From Kudoa neothunni (taxonomy: Eukaryota > Animalia > Cnidaria), in the NCBI GenBank assembly GCA_964304625.1, contig OZ199838.1:9141245-9205244 (forward strand): a DNA stretch of 64,000 bases. The letters run 5' to 3'. Each line of letters starts with the position of its first letter. Within the stretch, counting starts at the first letter, position 1. Below the pieces are notes generated by a model. That model did no database searches and had not been told where the DNA came from. It saw nothing but the letters and a program-made list of their open reading frames with translations. Positions 46,021 through 59,700 of the stretch are shown in pieces. A program made the translations under genes and the position numbers.

Positions 46021-46749
46021 AATTCGTTCGTTTTTATTAACCCGAAGGGGTTAAACTCTGTCTTAAAACTGACAAAATTTTAAACTTAAATATACATAAA
46101 GATTCAATTTATTTAAAGGAGTAGAAAAACTGACTTAAAAATATGGAAGATTTCGTTATAGAGAAATTTATAAGCACAAAGACATTTCGTTAAATATTCA
46201 CGCGCGCGCATGTTGAATTCATTCGCTTTTTTAAGGTACTTTCTAGAATTGATTCCTTAATAAATGACCTAATAATCATAATTAATTAGAAACAAAAATT
46301 TTAAATTAGTTTTACTGGTTTCATCATTTATTGTTCTAAAAAGAAAATTCAATTTTTTAATGTGTGATCTTTCTTATAATGAAAGTTTGTTTACAAACAT
46401 TTGAAATTAAATAATTTAAAATGTATAATAGTGATTTTTTATGTATAAATAATAGTTGTAGTCATCGTAGGAAGTTCGAAATAGTGTATTTTGATATTAC
46501 AACTAAGGAAATAAGGTTGGTCAACACCTTGCTCAAAAAAATTTCTCACCATATATTTAGCGTCTATTCAACTGATTCAAACAGTAGCAAAACATTCTAA
46601 AATACGTTTTTATCCTATAAATATAAATATATATACGAAAAAATTATTTTATGACCAAATATCAAATTATATAAGGTATTTCCGTACTTGCATTGTGGTG
46701 TAGTTGAATTTGGAATTTATGAAATGAGATTTGAATTGTTGATTATAGA

Positions 46750-48159
46750 TATGAGAAATTGCTACTTTACGAACTCGCTAATAGTTGTATATGTGTGGCT
46801 GGTGTGCGGAATTTTTCATCTACACAAATTGGAAAGGATAAATATTGATGCTATGAGACAAATTTTAAAAAATGTAAATCTAACGAATGATCAGTTGAAC
46901 GTACTACTAAATTCAGAAAATGATTCGCCCAATTCCAACCTAACTTCATCTAATAAGGGTTTTTCTTATCGATTGTAATCTTGTATCTAAATGGCTTTTT
47001 TTAGGCGAAACTCTCGGTAATGTGACCTCTGGTCAAAAAGAACTTACCAAGGAAGGATTTTCAGTTGTTAACGAAAACTTTAAAGAATACGACAATCTTA
47101 ATAATTTACCAGACGCGAATTCATTGAATTCAAAATTGTTAGAGTACATCAATCAAAACCAAAACGACATTGTCAATGTATCTGGAGAATATGTTTCAAC
47201 CAAAACGACCATTGTGCCTCAATCTCCACAAAACTCAACTAACACCGACGTGTTATTAAACATGCCACCTGAAAAGATCCAAAACTTATTATACAAACTA
47301 AACGGTAGCTCCTTATTCGGTAGTGTAAATGGATCAACGACGACTGCTACACCAACTTTAACGACATCAACAACAGCAACCATGGCTAATGCACCCTCCT
47401 CTACCCACGAAACTACCACTAACAGCAATTATGATAGTCTAATGACCACTCCTCAACCAACAACTGAAAATGTTACTAATGGGCCTATTGTTTATTTTAC
47501 CAATCAATCTAGCCCTTCAAACATCGTTAATGTAACAAGATATTTCTCAGAAATAAATTTTTTATCATTTATTTAGTTGCCGGATGTAGACAACAAATTA
47601 GATGCGGTTCAAAAATTTCAACTAAAAAAATACCCAGATGGAAGTTATATTTTGATCCCCCTTAAAGAGAAGCCAGAAAATAAAACCATTGAATTTCAAA
47701 TTACTAACGCCGATGGATCAAAGAAAAGTGAACCGCATTCACAGCCAGAGGTGCAAGAAAAGGCGTCAAACAGACAAAGCTTGCAAATATCCACACTAGC
47801 TCAAGCACTTTATAGTCCCTTCAGTGCAGACAAAAATGCGCTACATCTTAATCTTAAAGGAAAAGATGGTAGAGAAGGGAAATCAGGTCCAAAAGTAGAT
47901 GTTAGTAGCGACTTGGATTGTTATATGATTTGTGTTGATTAGGGTCCTCCAGGACCAGTTGGACCCGAAGGACCAATAGGACCGAAAGGTGACAAAGGAG
48001 AGCCTGGCAGCTGTAAAAGAGTGGTAAGTTTTTGCAACTCGAATATGTCGGTGTTTTACAGTATTTTAATTAAAGGTCCCAGGGATGTATCCGTGCTCGA
48101 ATGATGAAATTGAAAAAATTAATTTCCAAGTTGATTACCTCGAAAGAGTTTGTCTCAAA
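46750..48159 (+). CDS. Secreted protein 5' part: signal peptide, N/S/T-rich stalk, 12 Gly-X-Y repeats, Cys-containing neck; 3' linkage unresolved
   Basis: Exons about 46750-46957, 47005-47530, 47577-47894, 47943-48023 and 48076-48159. GKDGREGKSGPK|GPPGPVGPEGPIGPKGDKGEPGSC, then CSNDEIEKINFQVDYLERVCLK. Confidence 0.75.
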
Positions 48160-48684
48160 GTAAGCTTTTAGTTTTAACATATTCCACTAATCAGCTGCAC
48201 TTATATCTAAGTTCCTAGTAAACAGTTGAATAAACATAGCCATCCCTTCAACTCATTATTGTTATGTAAAAGATGAGTGATCCAAGCTATTACCATCTAT
48301 ATTTGAACCTTTATCTTGTTGCTACTTTCAATATGTAAGATAATCTGCATGCAGTCCATCATGAAGCTCATCGTTCGAATGTATAACAAAGTTAAATAAT
48401 TTGATTTATGCTTACGTAATAAATTTTAAATTATTTTTTTAATACACCATCGTTTGGTAGGCGTGATGATTCGATAATAGAGTCTATGTGGTTAAAGGTT
48501 ATGTGTTTTTCCGTGACTAAATAAGCACTTCTGGGGCATTACAGTTGGTAATATGAGCTGCATTTAGAAATAGATGAGTTTTAGGTCGAGATCGAGTTTA
48601 AAACAGAATATATGTAGGAAAAGGGATATTATGAATTTATAAATTTGTATTGTTGAAATTTAAGATCTAATAATATTTATCAAG

Positions 48685-49653
48685 GTATTGCCACCACTTC
48701 CATTTGTGCCCCAAGGGGAATTAGGTAGCGAAACCAACCCTCCTCCCAATTGTCAAGCTATTTATGAAGCAGACCCAAATGCTAAAAGTGGGTCATATTG
48801 GCTTATGGTGAATGGAATAAAATTTAAAGTAATTATTACAAAATATTTATAAAACATACGACAGTTAACAATAATAAAATAACATCAACGCTTACTCCGC
48901 ATATAGACAGTCTAATGCCCGAATTTAATTAAAGAGTAACATAATAGGATAGGTTTTGTTAGGAACTAAGCAGTATTACTAATTTAATACATTGTATGTG
49001 ATTGTTTTCAGACAAAATGTGTTTTTGACAAAAAAAACAACAAAGGTTGGAGTCTGGTTGGTAGAGTGGATGGACAAGGCTATGAATTTTCAGCGGTATC
49101 TAACGCATGGGCTGACACCTCGGTTATCAATCCAGAGACCGCCGCTGACGATGATACTCAAACTACAATGAAATCACACGCTTGGTTTCTGCTGAAAAAT
49201 AATGCAATCAATGTGTGTTTTGACGGACCGAATAAAGATTGTGCTACCTTCACTCACAACCTAGGAATCACACTTTCCAACCTTTTTGAAAATCAATACG
49301 GCATTGTGGTGGACGAAAAATGGACTTTTGAACGATTTCTTGCCAAAATTGGAAAATCATGCAATCTAAAACGAATGAATAAATATTGGTGTGGATTAAA
49401 CATGGCTAACATTTGTCATCCGGAGGACTTCAATCCTAACCTCAACCCTACCAATCACATAGTTCGTATTGGTTGTATAGGTGAAGATGAACTCACCTGT
49501 ACACCTGATGATTATGCTGTTGGAATAGGTGTTACTAGTTGCTACGATGGTTATGGTTGTAAGAGAGTTGGACCAAACACTCCCAGTATGCATTGGGCTT
49601 GTGACCCTTTCTTCGGGATCTTGGAACAAATTGCTTACATCTACGTCAGCTGA
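48685..49653 (+). CDS. Fibrinogen-related (COLFI/FReD-like) domain, isoform A; exons 48685-48828 and 49012-49653
   Basis: LGSETNPPPNCQAIYEADPNAKSGSYWL..FK|TKCVF..GWSLVGRVDG..IVRIGCIG..C..DDYAVGIG..AYIYVS*. From memory this resembles the cnidarian USOMP5-like family. Confidence 0.75.
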
Positions 49654-49911
49654 GCCACATCATTATTACTGTCTAACATTACAAAATATTTTGTTATCTG
49701 TATCATATAATTTAGTTACTGATTTTTTTAATATTTTAAGCAAATACTGCAGTTATTCTACCGATTTTTACGGTTACAAATTTTGTGTGTGTATATATGG
49801 GAGGTTGGTAGGAGGAGAAAGCGTTGAGTTAGTTTGGTAGTAGTAGTAGTATGAATTCTTAAAATCAACTATAATATCAATGTATATAAAAACTAACTTA
49901 ACTGACAATAG

Positions 49912-50589
49912 ACTTGGTGTGAATTTATTCCAGGCAGTGGTTCTGGTGGTGATGATGAAGCCATTCCCCAACCTGGAGGTTGGACCCTCATTGCACGTAT
50001 CAATGGTATGGACACTGACTGGTCTCCTATTTCAGAAAATTGGATCAACAATTCATCTTTTAATGAAGATTCTGCCTACAATATTGACGCTTCTTCATCC
50101 ATGAAAACAACCGGTTACAGCCAACTCATTTCAAACGTTATTTTGGTTTGTTTCAGTGGTTACAACACGGGATGTGCACCGTTCACCCACAATAAAAATG
50201 TTGCAACAAGTGAACTGTTTAAAAGATTTTTTGGTATTATTCCCGAAGAACAATACACATTTGCAACATTGATGAAATCATTCGGGAAAAGCTGCGATCT
50301 TTCTGCTATGAGACAAAGTTGGTGCGGAATGAATTTGGCTAACGTGTGCAATATCCATGGAGCTGATCCCAACGAAAAACCACCCAGAACCACTCACATT
50401 GTTAGAATAGGCTGTATTGGAGATAAGACCGCGACTTGCTTCCCCGACGATTATGCTATAGGTATAGGTGTCACTAGCTGTAAGGATGGTTTTGGTTGCA
50501 ACAATGTAGGTGACTCTAAAAATCTTCATTATCGCTGCGACTACGTATTTGGGGCATTCTCACAAACAGCCTTTGTCTATATCAAGTGA
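49912..50589 (+). CDS. Second paralogous terminal exon of the fibrinogen-related domain (isoform B)
   Basis: CTAAC branch site (about 49893) and AG at 49910-49911. Phase-0 exon TWCEF..GGWTLIARING..HIVRIGCIGD..C.PDDYAIGIGVTSC.DGFGC..AFVYIK*, collinear with exon 49012-49653. Confidence 0.75.
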   Translation, partial: TWCEFIPGSGSGGDDEAIPQPGGWTLIARINGMDTDWSPISENWINNSSFNEDSAYNIDASSSMKTTGYSQLISNVILVCFSGYNTGCAPFTHNKNVATSELFKRFFGIIPEEQYTFATLMKSFGKSCDLSAMRQSWCGMNLANVCNIHGADPNEKPPRTTHIVRIGCIGDKTATCFPDDYAIGIGVTSCKDGFGCNNVGDSKNLHYRCDYVFGAFSQTAFVYIK

Positions 50590-52587: not shown

Positions 52588-54520
52588 TTATGGATATCTT
52601 TCAATAATCATAGCATGCCCCTAAGGATAAATGATGAGAATTGGACTTTTACAAAATAAATACAAGCCCACCAGCAGCACATGCCGAAATAATCGCATAT
52701 CGAGGAGAATTGGGATCAATCGAATGTTCGTAAATAAGACGATTGGCGGCCATTGTTAATAATCTTGAACCGGTAGCCCCAAAAGGATGACCTAACGATA
52801 AACTACCTCCCCATTTGTTTACTTTATCCATTGGTAGAGATCCAATGGCATGCTCTAGTCCAATATGATTTTTGCAAAAATAATCGGATCCTAGAGCAGC
52901 GGACACTGCCAAGACTTGTCCGGCAAAAGCCTCATGTAATTCCACTACACTTATATCGTTCCATGTCAGCCGGTTTTTAATCATTAATTTTGAAATAGCA
53001 TATGCTGGTCTATACAGGAAATTGGCGTCAGTGTAATCAAAATATTGAAAATCACCCAATCAAAAGTTGATCAATAGGGTCTTGAGCGGTATAAATATAA
53101 TCTCTATAAAATGAATTCAACATAAACACAGTCATTAACAATCGTACCTAATATACGCTTTAGGTTGCAGTGTTAACTCGAGAGCTTTATTTTTTGACAT
53201 AATCAATGAAACAGAAGCTCCATCAGTCTAATCGAGATATAGATAACAGAAATTTAACTCGAAATGACTACAAGAGGAGAAGAATTTCCAGAAGTAATAG
53301 TACCATAATCTTTAATGAATTTCGGCTTTAAAGCGCTAAGTTCATCGATAGTTGTAGTACGAATAGTATTATCATTTTTTATTATTCCATTATCGGTCAT
53401 CACAGGAACAATATCACAAAGATGATTGTTCTATGTCGAAAATAACTTTTAAGTAAATTAAATCAACCGGAAAAATACATTTTTGGCTTTCTCTGCAGCT
53501 GTAAAACTGCTCAAAGCATATTCATCTTGCTGCTGTCTACTTATTTCAAACGTACTACAAAGTCGATCCGCACTATGTCCCAGTGATTCGTTTGAAGTGA
53601 ATTCAGATAATGATGGTGTCTACCAAATCCGTAGTATCGCTACATACATAAACAACTCGTTTTTACATCTATTCCAATATCCTTAATATTCGGAAGGGAC
53701 ACAGCATTTTTGTAATCATTCAGAGTTTTTGCCTAATTCAAAAATTACACACAATACCACAAAGTAAGGGCAACCAATTTTAATTTGACGAATAGTTGGC
53801 GTAGTGATTTTGATATTTTGATAGGAGGATCCGACAAACTGTCTACACCACCAGTTATAACAACGCCAGCTTGTCCAAGCTTTATCATATTAACTCCTTA
53901 AAGTAAGTTGGTTGAAAGAACATATTTTGCACTGCTAACAAAAAAACAATACCGGTGGTTATTGCTTGATTTGAAGATATACATGCCATAGATATAGTGT
54001 GTGCAGGAACATGGTCCGGTAGACCCGCCACAAGTTTCGACTACAATTATAAATTACTCATTAAAGATGGGATAATATTAATATAATTACCACTCTAGCT
54101 ACATTATGGGTGTTTATATCTTGCACTACTGTTCCCATAGTTACGTAATCGATGTGTTCTAAATATTTAGAGTAAGCTAGCCTAATGACAGATTGGAAGT
54201 AAATCAAACTTTTATCAATCCCCACTCTATCCATGAGTCCCTTAATTGCAATAGCTCCCAATTGATGAGGTTTTATTTCACTTAGACTACACAAATAAGT
54301 CAAATCTAATAGTAACAATTAAAAAAAGGAATATACTTTGTGCCACTTTTACAAAATGGGGTTCGGACACCATCAACAAAAACCACATCGCTCACAGAAG
54401 ACATATGCCTTTGCAATGCTAAATTCAAAATTTACAATTTTATTCTTATTCAAGGCTGCCCATACATATATTGGAGATAAATTTGAATTTATTAATCCTG
54501 TGAAGTTGGTTAACCATCAT
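52588..54520 (-). CDS. HADHB: Mitochondrial trifunctional enzyme beta subunit (3-ketoacyl-CoA thiolase), multi-exon
   Basis: [45 protein letters not shown] and SACAAGGL|[10 protein letters not shown]. Basic N-terminal presequence. Confidence 0.95.
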
Positions 54521-54899: not shown

Positions 54900-56733
54900 A
54901 TTTGACGCATATGATGATATATTGCCAGATTTCAATTTTCAAAAAGATTTTGTTCCACTAAATATAGAAAATGGATTAGAGATATCTACCACAAATTTAT
55001 ATGCCGTTCAGCAAAATTCCGGTTTCAAAACCGATATTGAAGAAATTCAAAAATATATTGGTGTCTTGATTATCATGGGCATAGTTAAAATGCCTAGATA
55101 TAGGCGTTACTGGACAAAACTCTTGCAATATCCCATTGTCACTGAATGTTTTTCGAGAAATCGCTTTGAGGCAATGTCGAAATATTTACACTTCGTAAAT
55201 AATAATAACATTGCAACCGACCCAAACTCTCCCAAATATAACAAAGTTGCAAAAATTCGCCCTTTATTAAATTCGGTCAGAGAAGCCTGCCTGAAAGTAG
55301 AATGTGAGAGGAATAATTCTATAGATGAGAAAATTATTCCTTTTAAAGGAAAATGTAAGGCTAAGCAATACATTCCGAAAAAACCGACAAAATAGGGTTT
55401 CAAAATGTTTGCCAGATGTGGTGTTAGTGGTTTGGTATACGATTTTCACCTCTATGATGGAAATAAACCAAATGTGCGTAGAAGTTGTGGACTTACATCC
55501 GGTGATTTTGTTGTAAGCTTTGTGAAAGTTTGCCTGCAGACAGTAACCACTATGTTTATTTTGACAATTGGTTTACTTCTATTCCACTCCAAATTTTTCT
55601 AAAGAAAAGAAATATTTTTTCGGTTGGAATGATACGCTCAAATAGAGTGAAAGGATCTTCATTGATGGCCGACAAAGAGCTCAAGAAATTAGGACGCGGC
55701 TCATATGACTATGTGGGAGATTCTAAAAACGGTATATATTTTACACGTTGGTTTGATAGCTCTGTTGTCACTCTCTCTTCTACCCATTCCTCAGTTGAGC
55801 CTGTTTCATTGACAAGAAGATTTGACCGATTCAAGAAAAGAATAATAGAGGTAACTTGTCCAGCAGTTGTCAACGAATATAATAAAAACATGGGAGGGGT
55901 TGACCTCTCTGATATGTTGATGTCGCTTTATGTTATGCAACATAAATGCAAGAAATATTATCATCGAATTTTCTTCTGGTGCTTGAGCACGTCAATAATC
56001 AATTCTTGGATATTATACTGACGAAATTGCGCTGTTAGAAATGTACCGAATAGGAATATTTTAGATTTGTTAGATTTTTCATTAAGTATATGTGAAAATC
56101 TTATATATTACAAAAAAATCGCCCTTACAAAAAAAGAGGAGGACCATCTAAAACCCTCCTTGAAACCGAAGGTAATGATTCCAGTACAACAAAAGTGCAG
56201 CTTACCGACCAAATCAGGTTTGATGACGTAGGTCACTATCCTGAGATACGTACCGACAGGTCTAGGTGTCGCGTTTGTCAGATGAAAACTAGAATATGTT
56301 GTATGAAATGCAACTCATACTGTTGTTTAACCGCTGAGAGAAATTGTTTTTTTTCAATATCATAAAGAAAAAAATGTATAATTATTTAAATCAATAAAAT
56401 ATGTTGTTTCATGCGCGCGCGCACTTCTATTACTACTTCCTTATATTCCCATTGTCCCATATATAGAACAGTTGAAAAATTAAGCATATATTCCAAAAAA
56501 GTAATTTAGCTTGTTTAATGTAACACAAGGTCCGAACCTGGGTTCTTTGCATTAAAAGGCGGTGGTGCCATACCGCACTGCTCTCGATCGCACATCTATA
56601 GGTTATAGGTTGGTGGATTATAACCCTTATATAATCCACTTGTTACATTTAAAAATAATTAAAATTGAGAAAGCAAACATAATTAATGTAGAATAATAAT
56701 TTTCAGATCGAAAAAAAATTGGGAGCGAAAGGG
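54900..56733 (+). mobile_element. piggyBac (PGBD3-like) with pseudogenised transposase; left end uncertain
   Basis: SIDEKIIPFKG..QYIPKKPTK*GFK, YFDNWFTS, YNKNMGGVDLSD and a C-terminal Cys-rich domain. Right end GGG|TTAA at 56731-56737. Confidence 0.9.
56519..56647 (-). mobile_element. 129-bp solo-LTR-like element carrying a tRNA-derived Pol III promoter
   Basis: TGTAACA...TGTTACA termini and 5-bp TSD TTTAA. Perfect 10-bp hairpin stem (56613-56622 / 56630-56639). Minus-strand CAGTGCGGTATGGCA..CTTTTAA..GGTTCGGACC is tRNA-Lys(UUU)-like. Confidence 0.7.
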
Positions 56734-56737
56734 TTAA

Positions 56738-59700
56738 CAAAAATAAAGGAACCTCAACCGAGAATACCTCGAATCATTACAAAATGGAATCCAAAGTCTG
56801 CGAAATGTTGGAAAAGCTCACAAATAGAATCGCCACTTTGGAGTCAGAAATACAACATAATAAAAAGAACGATGGTACCGGACCCGACGAAAGGAGACGT
56901 TTCAAGTGCAACAGAAAAGGACACATTCAATGCAGATGTCCTTTAAACTTCAGGAGGTCGCCCCCTCAGGCAAGTCGGGTACGACCTCCTCTACATTAAC
57001 CTGCCAACTATTTACGTTGCTGTTACTTAACTGTTATGTTAATGGTCATTATTGTGTGTTTTTATTGGATATTGATGCCGATATATCATTGATAAATAAA
57101 CACTTGTGTAATAGTATGAGAGTAGATGCATGCAACGTTATCCTAAAATGTATCAATAACTCAATGTTAAAAATTAATAAGAAAGTTTATGTTGATATCC
57201 AAATCGGTATACCAAATTCAACCACCCTTTCCTTGTTGGAAATGACCCACCATATGATGGCATGCTGGGATTTGATTTCATGGCTATAAACAATGTAATT
57301 ATCGACGTTGGAAAAAGATTGATTTATGTTAATACAATACCAACTGAAATAGCAAACACAAAAACAAAACAAGATGTCTCACATAACAATTACACAACTG
57401 TCAGTGAAATTTTCAAAAAACATACAGGTTTATTCACGGACAAATTATCGAAATCAATTACACGAATTACGATCGAGCATCGTATCAACACAGGAAATAC
57501 TTTGCCGATAAAGCTGACTTGTAGAGACTGCCGATTTCGTTAAAGAAGGAAGTACATGATCAAATACCCGAAACGATAACCATTGGAATAATTCGGAAAA
57601 GCAACAGCCCATGGGCATCACCTATAGTCATGGTAAAAAGAAAAACGGAACGCACCGAATTTGCGCTGGCTATAGAAAATTAAATGCGGAAACGAAAAAA
57701 GACTGATACCCTATCCCAAGAATCGATGAGGTATTGGAGTTATTAAAAGGATCATCAATCTTTACCGCGCTGGATATGACATCAGGATATTGGCAAATAC
57801 CTGTTGCTGAAGAGGATAAAGTGAAAACAGCGTTCATAACACCGTATGGACTGTTTGAGTTTAATGTCATGCCGTTTGGCCTTTGCAACTCATCGGCAAC
57901 GTTTTAGAGACTCATGGAGCGTATTCTACGGGAATTTATAAACAAAACGTGTATCGTTTATTTGGACGATATTTCAATATTTTCAAAAAATCTGGAACAA
58001 CATTCGCAAGATATCAACGAGATCCTAAACATATTCGAAGATTATGGCCTATAGCTATCCAAAGGAAAATGCAAATTTAACCAGGAAAAAATCAAATACT
58101 TGGAACATATTCTGTCAAAAGATGGAATTGAAGTGGACAAGAGCGAAATAAAGACCATTGGAAACTATCCCGTACTGAGGTGTAGGAAAGAACTACAGGA
58201 GATTTATTGACGGATGCTCACCGATATGTGCATAACTTTACAATTTAACCCCTCCATGCCTATTGTGCGGTATACTGAACATTAACTTCTCCTTTGTCTA
58301 GAATGAACATTTAACTATTTTTTCGCATTCGTTACAAACACATAATTTTAACTCAATTGGATGTATAAAAATCGTTATTATATTTTTTAAGAAACTTTCT
58401 GTATAATAAATTGCATTAACAGTGTTTAATTCTTCCTATCACGTTCTTCCTTAAAGTAATGTATTAATTCGTGTACCAAATTATATTATTTTTTGGATCC
58501 AAAATTTATACAATTACAAAATGTTGTTGCTAATTAAATTTTCCTCTTTAAATTTTAAGAAACATTATTATTTGAAATGATACGATTTTAAGTCTTGTCA
58601 GTAAACTGAACAACAGGAATACGTGGACCTATTCTTGGACAATCGCAATGGATTACGACATATCCGAACCGGATACATATTCTAAAGATGATACAACATT
58701 TACATCATCAATAATGAACGAATTCTCAGATGCGAAAGAATGTTCATCATCCGATGAATTTGTCGCTGAAATTGACACTAACCTTTAATGGAAGAAACAA
58801 GATATCAGTTCAAATTTACCAGAGGAATTGTGCAACATAAACGACGAATTTGAAAAGTTAGATCATTTAATTCACCCCATCGATTATTTCAACCAATTTG
58901 TTGACGATGATTCGATTGAATTAATTTTAAACAAATCAAATCGATGCTATTGGTCCAACCATTTCAATTATCCCCTATTTCAGATGTCCTTTCTAGAGAC
59001 AGATTTGAACAACTCTCGAAATTTTTACATTTTAATAATAATGATAATGCAACTAATGATCATTCTTCCCAAACGTTTGATCAGTTTGTCAAAATTAGAA
59101 CTTTTTTAGAGCACTTGAGGCAAGTATTTTTAAAAATCACTCCAGAGAGCATAAATTCAGTCGACGAACAAATGATTCCCTTTAAGGGGTTAGTGTCGGG
59201 AAAAACAGTATATATCAAATAAACCGACCAAATGGGGCTTCAAGGTTTTTGCTAGATGTGGAATAATGCATGATTTCAATTTTTATGATGGAAAATCGTC
59301 CCGTTGTACAAGAAAGCTGTGGTTTGGTTTCCGGAGATTTTGTAATAAAATTATGTGAACAACTTCCAAACAATAGGATGTATCTATCGTATTTCGACAA
59401 CTGGTTCACATCATTCCGGATGCAATTTATATTGAAAAAAAGGGGAATATATTGGGTGGGGACTATTAGAAATAAAAGAATTAAAGGATGTCCCTTACTC
59501 GGTAAAATGATTTAATGAAAAAAATGACGTGGCTCATTTGATGTTGCTCAAAACTCTAATGATGCATTAGCATTAACTTGATGATATGATAGCTTCGTTA
59601 TGACTTTATCATCCACTCACTCTGGTAGTGAACCTCTAACAACTGTAAATAGATATGATAGGCGATATAAAAACGCGATAAAGTCGAGTGTCCAGATGTT

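What the first reader, a model, noticed from the sequence alone, without database searches (positions are those of the whole stretch)
48685..50589. Switchable head domain: one shared exon, two tandem mutually exclusive terminal exons for a fibrinogen-related domain
Seen: exon 48685-48828 encodes only the first subdomain (GSETNP..C..SGSYWL) and ends in phase 0. Exons 49012-49653 and 49912-50589 both start in phase 0 at the homologous residue (T-K-C-V-F / T-W-C-E-F), share the same Cys framework and each has its own stop. The 258-nt spacer holds no copy of the first-subdomain exon and no signal peptide, and exon B has a CTAAC branch site. Established: the cnidarian nematogalectin gene makes A/B isoforms by alternative splicing of duplicated exons, but with a galactose-lectin domain. 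Inference: this is a parallel, possibly undescribed system that swaps the ligand-binding head of a secreted protein, perhaps by stage or host.
Basis: partly seen in the sequence, partly recalled or inferred. Interest (0 to 1): 0.8.

Follow-up and report, generated by a model that had tools for sequence, protein, structure and literature searches.

The report
Ancient two-headed collagenous intelectin-like gene
A secreted collagen-stalk protein of a fish-parasitic cnidarian can end in either of two duplicated, intelectin-shaped heads chosen by splicing; the same pair, in the same order, is kept in Hydra, jellyfish and corals, so it is an ancient, apparently unstudied cnidarian system rather than a parasite invention.

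Summary
Observation confirmed. One phase-0 donor (48828) is followed by two stop-terminated exons, A (49012-49653) and B (49912-50589), 44% identical, with 11 Cys each. The gene looks myxozoan: signal peptide, Ser/Thr-rich stalk, about 12 Gly-X-Y triplets, Cys-flanked neck, head. The same shared-exon/A/B layout occurs in six other cnidarian genomes. A and B each form one clade across Anthozoa, Medusozoa and Myxozoa (99-100 support), under strong purifying selection. Intron-less coral contigs carry both junctions, and RefSeq lists both isoforms in Hydra, Montipora and Oculina. The coral A-form contig keeps B as 3' UTR, pointing to two acceptors competing for one donor. No RNA from this species was available, so splicing here is inferred. 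The head folds like intelectin (Z 15.5), not a canonical fibrinogen/ficolin domain. It parallels nematogalectin and NSP2/nb012 but is neither, and shows no concerted evolution. A host-driven origin is excluded; ligand and cell type are unknown. A polar-capsule role is plausible but had no direct support. I found no paper on it, and no earlier scan note on other DNA.

The parts
46751..46958 (+). Exon 1 (predicted): ATG at 46751 (another in-frame ATG at 46724), hydrophobic signal-peptide-like stretch; ends in phase 1
   Evidence: Kyte-Doolittle maximum 2.68 at aa 11; boundaries inferred from GT/AG and frame, no RNA
47005..47531 (+). Exon 2 (predicted): Asn/Ser/Thr-rich low-complexity stalk
47577..47894 (+). 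Exon 3: conserved pre-collagen motif and start of the Gly-X-Y run
   Evidence: tblastn matches in Henneguya, Hydractinia, L003 and L010
47943..48023 (+). Exon 4: collagen Gly-X-Y repeats ending in Cys
   Evidence: Pfam Collagen E 5e-4, below the curated cut-off; 12 triplets in full-length orthologues
48076..48159 (+). Exon 5: Cys-flanked amphipathic neck (coiled coil inferred)
48685..48828 (+). Exon 6, shared: linker plus first helix and hairpin of the head; the single donor used by both isoforms
   Evidence: same phase-0 donor in six orthologous loci; weak COLFI hit
49012..49653 (+). Alternative last coding exon A (proximal acceptor), 213 aa, intelectin-fold remainder
   Evidence: coral contig L018 carries the shared-to-A junction
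49654..49911 (+). 258-nt spacer: 3' UTR of the A form and 3' end of the B intron; no AATAAA
   Evidence: 51-669 nt in orthologues
49912..50589 (+). Alternative last coding exon B (distal acceptor), 225 aa, with a B-specific loop insertion near its start
   Evidence: shared-to-B junction in L011-L017, L019 and P0145

Best explanation
A single-copy gene for a secreted, probably trimeric collagenous protein with an intelectin-fold head. One donor (48828) is spliced either to the proximal acceptor (49012; form A, about 667 aa, spacer and exon B left as 3' UTR) or to the distal acceptor (49912; form B, about 679 aa). The duplication predates the Anthozoa-Medusozoa split and both heads have been kept distinct by selection. 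Inferred working: the shared stalk, collagen and neck trimerise three heads, and the A or B head supplies different binding loops, so splicing sets the binding surface (pure or mixed trimers). Shown: anatomy, conservation, selection, both junctions in orthologues, fold. Inferred: splicing in this species (about 0.9), glycan or matrix binding (about 0.6), a cnidocyst/polar-capsule or spore-matrix structural role (about 0.5).
For: Same donor-A-B layout with AG + Thr codon in phase 0 in seven genomic loci, plus adjacent M. squamalis models MXB_3248/3249. Spacer only 51 nt in Henneguya and 75 nt in L010. Intron-less contigs L018 (shared+A, then spacer+B) and L019 (shared+B) share 766/771 nt upstream and diverge exactly at the junction. 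RefSeq X1/X2 pairs in two Hydra assemblies, two Montipora species and Oculina. A 596-aa contiguous ORF with shared+B groups loosely with myxozoan B (85/70). Tree: A and B each one side of a branch, 99/99, 97/95 and 100/99 with outgroups. pN/pS 0.099/0.74 (A) and 0.044/0.76 (B) against L010. Fold: Foldseek E 2e-8 and VIA Z 15.5 over 209 residues to human intelectin-1.
Against: No RNA run of this species: the laid runs were genomic contigs, and one metatranscriptome gave no reads. No myxozoan A-form cDNA was found. Logan contigs are assembly paths, their RNA origin is inferred from lacking introns, and L018 could reflect incompletely processed RNA. RefSeq isoforms are automatic models. No trace in the C. 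shasta capsule table as held (sequences cut near 400 aa), and it is not among NSP1-7. No sequence-level match to intelectins, and metal/glycan residues were not mapped.
Confidence: 0.8

Rival explanations
1. Same splicing, but its purpose is co-expression at a set ratio to build A/B heterotrimers (as C1q or fibrinogen use paralogous chains), not switching between cell types or stages.
For: Identical collagen and neck in both forms; both heads retained in every genomic locus of this gene examined, with class-invariant residues (68 columns invariant in A, 88 in B, 47 in both). Hydra nb012a/b are co-expressed in the same nematocytes (PMC2687796).
Against: No expression data for this gene. B-form intron-less contigs were recovered more often than A-form ones, which may mean unequal levels or only assembly bias.
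Confidence: 0.4
2. The protein is a soluble innate-immune or adhesion lectin (ficolin/collectin-like defence collagen), not a capsule component, and the two heads widen glycan recognition.
For: Collagen-neck-lectin-fold architecture; intelectins recognise bacterial glycans (PMC6321704); not found in the capsule or NSP lists I could check.
Against: Single copy, slowly evolving and retained in a 40-Mb reduced parasite genome; immune lectins usually expand and diverge (general knowledge). The same exon-duplication pattern marks nematocyst genes (PMC6134521).
Confidence: 0.3
3. In this myxozoan the A/B choice is tied to host or spore type (myxospore versus actinospore).
For: Both exons are intact and under selection in four myxozoan data sets.
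Against: The pair is equally conserved in free-living Hydra, jellyfish and corals, so host alternation is not needed to explain it. No stage data.
Confidence: 0.15
4. Exon B is a separate gene or a dead duplicate in this species, or A and B are joined into one double-headed protein as some gene predictions show.
For: B is annotated as its own gene in M. squamalis and Hydractinia; fused models exist for Henneguya, Oculina, A. digitifera and old Hydra builds.
Against: B has no signal peptide or first subdomain, the spacer is 51-75 nt in two myxozoans, and its acceptor is conserved; B is the most conserved exon. The fused models cut A at three different places and truncate it; later RefSeq builds give separate isoforms.
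Confidence: 0.05

Closest known systems
Nematogalectin A/B (Hwang et al. 2010, as described in PMC4195985 and PMC6134521)
   Same: Secreted cnidarian protein with a short Gly-X-Y run and a lectin-type head; two forms from tandemly duplicated, alternatively spliced exons.
   Different: The head here is intelectin-fold, not gal-lectin. Only the part after the first subdomain is swapped and the collagen is shared. Nematogalectin copies show concerted evolution in medusozoans, lie on different contigs in Nematostella, and showed no alternative splicing of A, B or related genes in Kudoa; here A and B stay distinct and in tandem in all three lineages.
NSP2 / nb012 (PMC6134521, PMC2687796)
   Same: Cnidarian gene with two transcripts from tandem duplication of 3' exons; present in Myxozoa.
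   Different: Laminin G3-like domain, no collagen reported; its tree groups by lineage (concerted evolution), whereas this one groups by isoform.
Intelectins (X-type lectins: human intelectin-1 4WMQ, Xenopus XEEL, lamprey LSVL)
   Same: Fold of the whole head, Z 15.5, rmsd 3.3 A over 209 residues, intelectin-1 residues 34-313.
   Different: About 15% identity and no HMM match; intelectins lack collagen and coiled coils (PMC6321704); binding residues not tested.
Ficolins and other canonical FReD proteins
   Same: Collagen plus a fibrinogen-like N-terminal lobe.
   Different: Only Z 5.6 to H-ficolin and 7.0 or less to fibrinogen chains; no Pfam Fibrinogen_C hit in either exon or in full-length orthologues.
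RefSeq uncharacterised genes Hydra vulgaris LOC100214365, Oculina LOC144646623, Rhopilema LOC135688898, Montipora XP_068678355/6
   Same: Orthologues; automatic annotation already lists both isoforms in Hydra, Montipora and Oculina.
   Different: Unnamed; no paper in the searched library mentions the identifiers tried.

Membership tests
Nematogalectin | Signal peptide and short Gly-X-Y domain | tested here: met
   (signal peptide judged from hydrophobicity only)
Nematogalectin | C-terminal galactose-binding lectin domain | tested here: not met
   No Gal_Lectin Pfam hit; fold is intelectin
Nematogalectin | Localisation in the nematocyst tubule | not testable with these tools
   No expression data found
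NSP2/nb012 | Laminin G3-like domain | tested here: not met
   No such Pfam or fold match
Intelectin (X-type lectin) | Fibrinogen-like lobe plus intelectin-specific fold | tested here: met
   Foldseek E 2e-8, VIA Z 15.5, next best 7.0; exon B alone Z 10.1
Intelectin (X-type lectin) | Sequence-profile similarity to solved intelectins | tested here: not met
Intelectin (X-type lectin) | No collagen or coiled-coil stalk | tested here: not met
   12 Gly-X-Y triplets and a neck are present; criterion from PMC6321704
Intelectin (X-type lectin) | Calcium-dependent glycan-binding residues | not testable with these tools
   Fold searches return ranges, not residue pairs
Ficolin | Canonical FReD over about 215 aa after the collagen | tested here: not met
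   No Fibrinogen_C hit; Z 5.6
Alternative last exons from tandem duplication | Homologous exons in tandem after one donor, same phase, own stops | tested here: met
Alternative last exons from tandem duplication | Both junctions present in RNA of orthologues | tested here: met
   L018 and L019; RNA origin inferred from lack of introns
Alternative last exons from tandem duplication | Both junctions present in RNA of this species | tested here: inconclusive
   No informative RNA run

The most novel reading that the evidence does not exclude
An undescribed core cnidocyst/polar-capsule protein family, a collagenous intelectin-fold lectin, whose two heads have been chosen by splicing since the last common ancestor of corals, jellyfish and myxozoans and confer different glycan specificity by cell type or, in myxozoans, by spore stage.
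Probability: 0.3. Interest if true: 0.78.

Novelty: new variant of a known kind. Interest (0 to 1): 0.56.

Why it matters
It adds a third cnidarian case of duplicated 3' exons and, unlike the two described ones, one in which both isoform lineages stay separate and in tandem across corals, medusozoans and myxozoans (more than 500 million years by the myxozoan date in PMC5566210). Collagen joined to an intelectin fold is not a standard lectin architecture, and Pfam misses the head. Retention in a highly reduced fish parasite suggests an essential role, perhaps in the capsule or in attachment. It is directly testable in Hydra, Hydractinia or corals with isoform-specific probes and glycan arrays. 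It also explains several split or fused gene models in public cnidarian annotations.

Tried and rejected
Read laying: X2-X4 are unspliced genomic contigs and X5 gave no reads. The single joint 48667-49266 has TA..GG ends with unknown letters between, and is not a splice junction. Pfam and PDB sequence searches did not name the head. Identifier and keyword paper searches found no description. Supplement searches of the C. shasta, Biology 2022 nematocyst-proteome, Nematostella matrisome, Stylophora and Hydractinia papers gave no hit, but several files are truncated or not held, so this is not evidence of absence. Hwang 2010, Balasubramanian 2012 and Wesener 2015 are not held. Rejected: nematogalectin, NSP2 and ficolin membership; B as pseudo-exon; B as independent gene; the CTAAC motif as strong evidence. 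My first notebook entry misplaced the donor by one base; corrected. As the operators asked, the window's spliced model was searched exon by exon and never joined; the whole-head fold used the Hydra RefSeq protein by reference (P0112:340-586). The large protein search was run once because family scans left the head unnamed.

Full report
Observation. Exon 48685-48828 (144 nt) lies between AG and GT in phase 0. Exons A (49012-49653) and B (49912-50589) each follow an AG, begin with a Thr codon in phase 0 and end in TGA. They are 44% identical over 203 aa and have 11 Cys each. The genome (40 Mb) gave only these two matches for the head, and the 258-nt spacer has no copy of the shared exon. The CTAAC before B is real but weak: about 2% chance per 30 nt, and not seen in all orthologues.

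The whole gene. Frame and GT/AG checks give six shared exons from about 46751: a signal-peptide-like start, an Asn/Ser/Thr-rich stalk, a conserved pre-collagen motif, about 12 Gly-X-Y triplets, a Cys-flanked neck and the first part of the head. By adding exon lengths, form A is about 667 aa and form B about 679 aa. The 5' boundaries are predictions. Short introns, other notes on this genome and the tree place the organism among myxozoans; the species is not identified.

Conservation. The same order, one donor then A then B, with conserved acceptors, is in a close myxozoan (L010), Henneguya salminicola (L008), Hydractinia (L009), a scyphozoan-like assembly (L003) and two anthozoan-like assemblies (L005, L006). 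Myxobolus squamalis has the two as neighbouring models. The spacer is only 51 and 75 nt in two myxozoans, too little for a promoter and 5' exons. In maximum-likelihood trees A and B each form one group spanning Anthozoa, Medusozoa and Myxozoa (99/99; 97/95 and 100/99 with outgroups), and each group separates anthozoans from medusozoans plus myxozoans. Whether A and B are each other's closest relatives among all heads is unresolved. Against L010, synonymous sites are near saturation while pN is 0.099 for A and 0.044 for B. About 20 aligned positions and one loop insertion distinguish all A from all B sequences, many in the C-terminal loops.

Splicing evidence. For this species there is none: no holder run was RNA, and the reads laid were genomic or absent. 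Orthologues supply it. Intron-less Montipora-type contigs L018 (SRR28116744) and L019 (SRR22097840) share 766 of 771 coding bases up to the junction; L018 continues into A, its stop, a 238-nt spacer and then B, while L019 goes straight into B. Further intron-less B forms come from a Pocillopora-type coral (nine contigs), a hydrozoan-like contig and a 596-aa ORF that groups loosely with myxozoan B. RefSeq lists both isoforms, identical up to the junction, for Hydra vulgaris LOC100214365 in two assemblies, two Montipora species and Oculina. Since the coral A form keeps B as 3' UTR and the window's spacer has no AATAAA, the likeliest mechanism is competition of two acceptors for one donor with a common 3' end. 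This rests on one contig, and some orthologous spacers do contain AATAAA, so alternative polyadenylation is not excluded.

The head. Pfam does not name it. An AlphaFold model of exon B alone (pLDDT 78.5) matches human intelectin-1 residues 66-313 at Z 10.1. The complete Hydra A head (pLDDT 89, pTM 0.90) matches residues 34-313 at Z 15.5 and Foldseek E 2e-8, with fibrinogen chains at Z 7 or less and H-ficolin at 5.6. So the shared exon and either last exon form one intelectin-fold domain, and nearly nine tenths of it is swapped. From memory, intelectin's ligand site lies in its C-terminal part and so would fall in the swapped exon; I could not map residues. Similar folds occur in other cnidarian proteins such as skeletal organic matrix protein 5. 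Single-head sequence relatives occur in Nematostella (LOC116615576, with an extra intron), the sponge Corticium and metagenomic proteins that look algal, bacterial or archaeal (my guess from sequence), so the domain is not cnidarian-specific, though the A/B gene was seen only in cnidarians.

How it probably works. Shown: anatomy, conservation, selection, both junctions in orthologues, fold. Inferred: collagen and neck trimerise three chains, as in ficolins and collectins (established for those families), and splicing decides which binding surface is shown. Either different cells or stages make A or B, or one cell makes both and builds mixed trimers; nb012a/b are co-expressed (PMC2687796), so the second is a serious rival. 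A capsule or spore-matrix role is suggested by retention in a reduced parasite and by the same duplication pattern in nematogalectin, minicollagens and NSP2 (PMC6134521). Against it, the gene is not among NSP1-7 and did not show in the truncated C. shasta table. A host switch cannot be the original reason, since free-living cnidarians have the pair.

Comparison and novelty. It works like nematogalectin and NSP2 at the gene level and like a collagenous lectin at the protein level, but fails membership of nematogalectin, NSP2, ficolin and intelectin proper. The splicing mechanism is of a known kind, and automatic annotation already lists the isoforms, but I found no paper on the gene (the library lacks most subscription journals). 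What is new is the collagen-plus-intelectin-fold architecture and an isoform pair kept distinct, without the concerted evolution reported for NSP2 and medusozoan nematogalectins, from corals to myxozoans. Verdict: real, new variant of a known kind, interest 0.56.

Procedure. The window's spliced model was searched exon by exon by reference; the joined step was left out.

Noticed in passing
window 49531; P0113, P0101, P0070, P0040: Several public models fuse a truncated A to B. The old Hydra model and the Acropora digitifera model cut A at the same place (after the conserved A-I/L-G-I/L-G motif, where a Val codon offers a phase-0 GT; the window has GT at 49531). Probably a predictor artefact, but a minor double-head splice form is not excluded.
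   Followed up: partly
L007 (Nematostella LOC116615576), P0110/P0111: Single-head relative with 9 Gly-X-Y triplets, the same intron after the first subdomain and an extra intron in the head; it falls outside both A and B. No Nematostella A/B gene turned up in my searches.
   Followed up: partly
P0310 (Corticium candelabrum LOC134181800), P0024, P0147-P0151: The same head occurs in a sponge and in metagenomic proteins that look algal, bacterial or archaeal (E 1e-52 to 1e-61), with other stalks; no Pfam family covers it.
   Followed up: partly
window 48160-48684: A 525-nt intron, long for this gene; Henneguya has extra short coding pieces here and an intron inside the shared exon, so micro-exons may be missed.
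   Followed up: no
window 52649-54430, - strand: Intron-split thiolase-like gene (resembles mitochondrial trifunctional enzyme beta subunit, from memory), convergent with the studied gene.
   Followed up: no
window 54922-56021, + strand: piggyBac-like transposase pieces in separate frames (recognised by eye).
   Followed up: no
window 56719-58080, + strand: Fragments resembling a gypsy-type retroelement (zinc knuckle, protease, reverse transcriptase start) in several frames (recognised by eye).
   Followed up: no
L010 (SRR31175926): An unlabelled AT-rich contig of a close myxozoan relative: 94% identical in B, 85% in A, with synonymous sites near saturation.
   Followed up: yes
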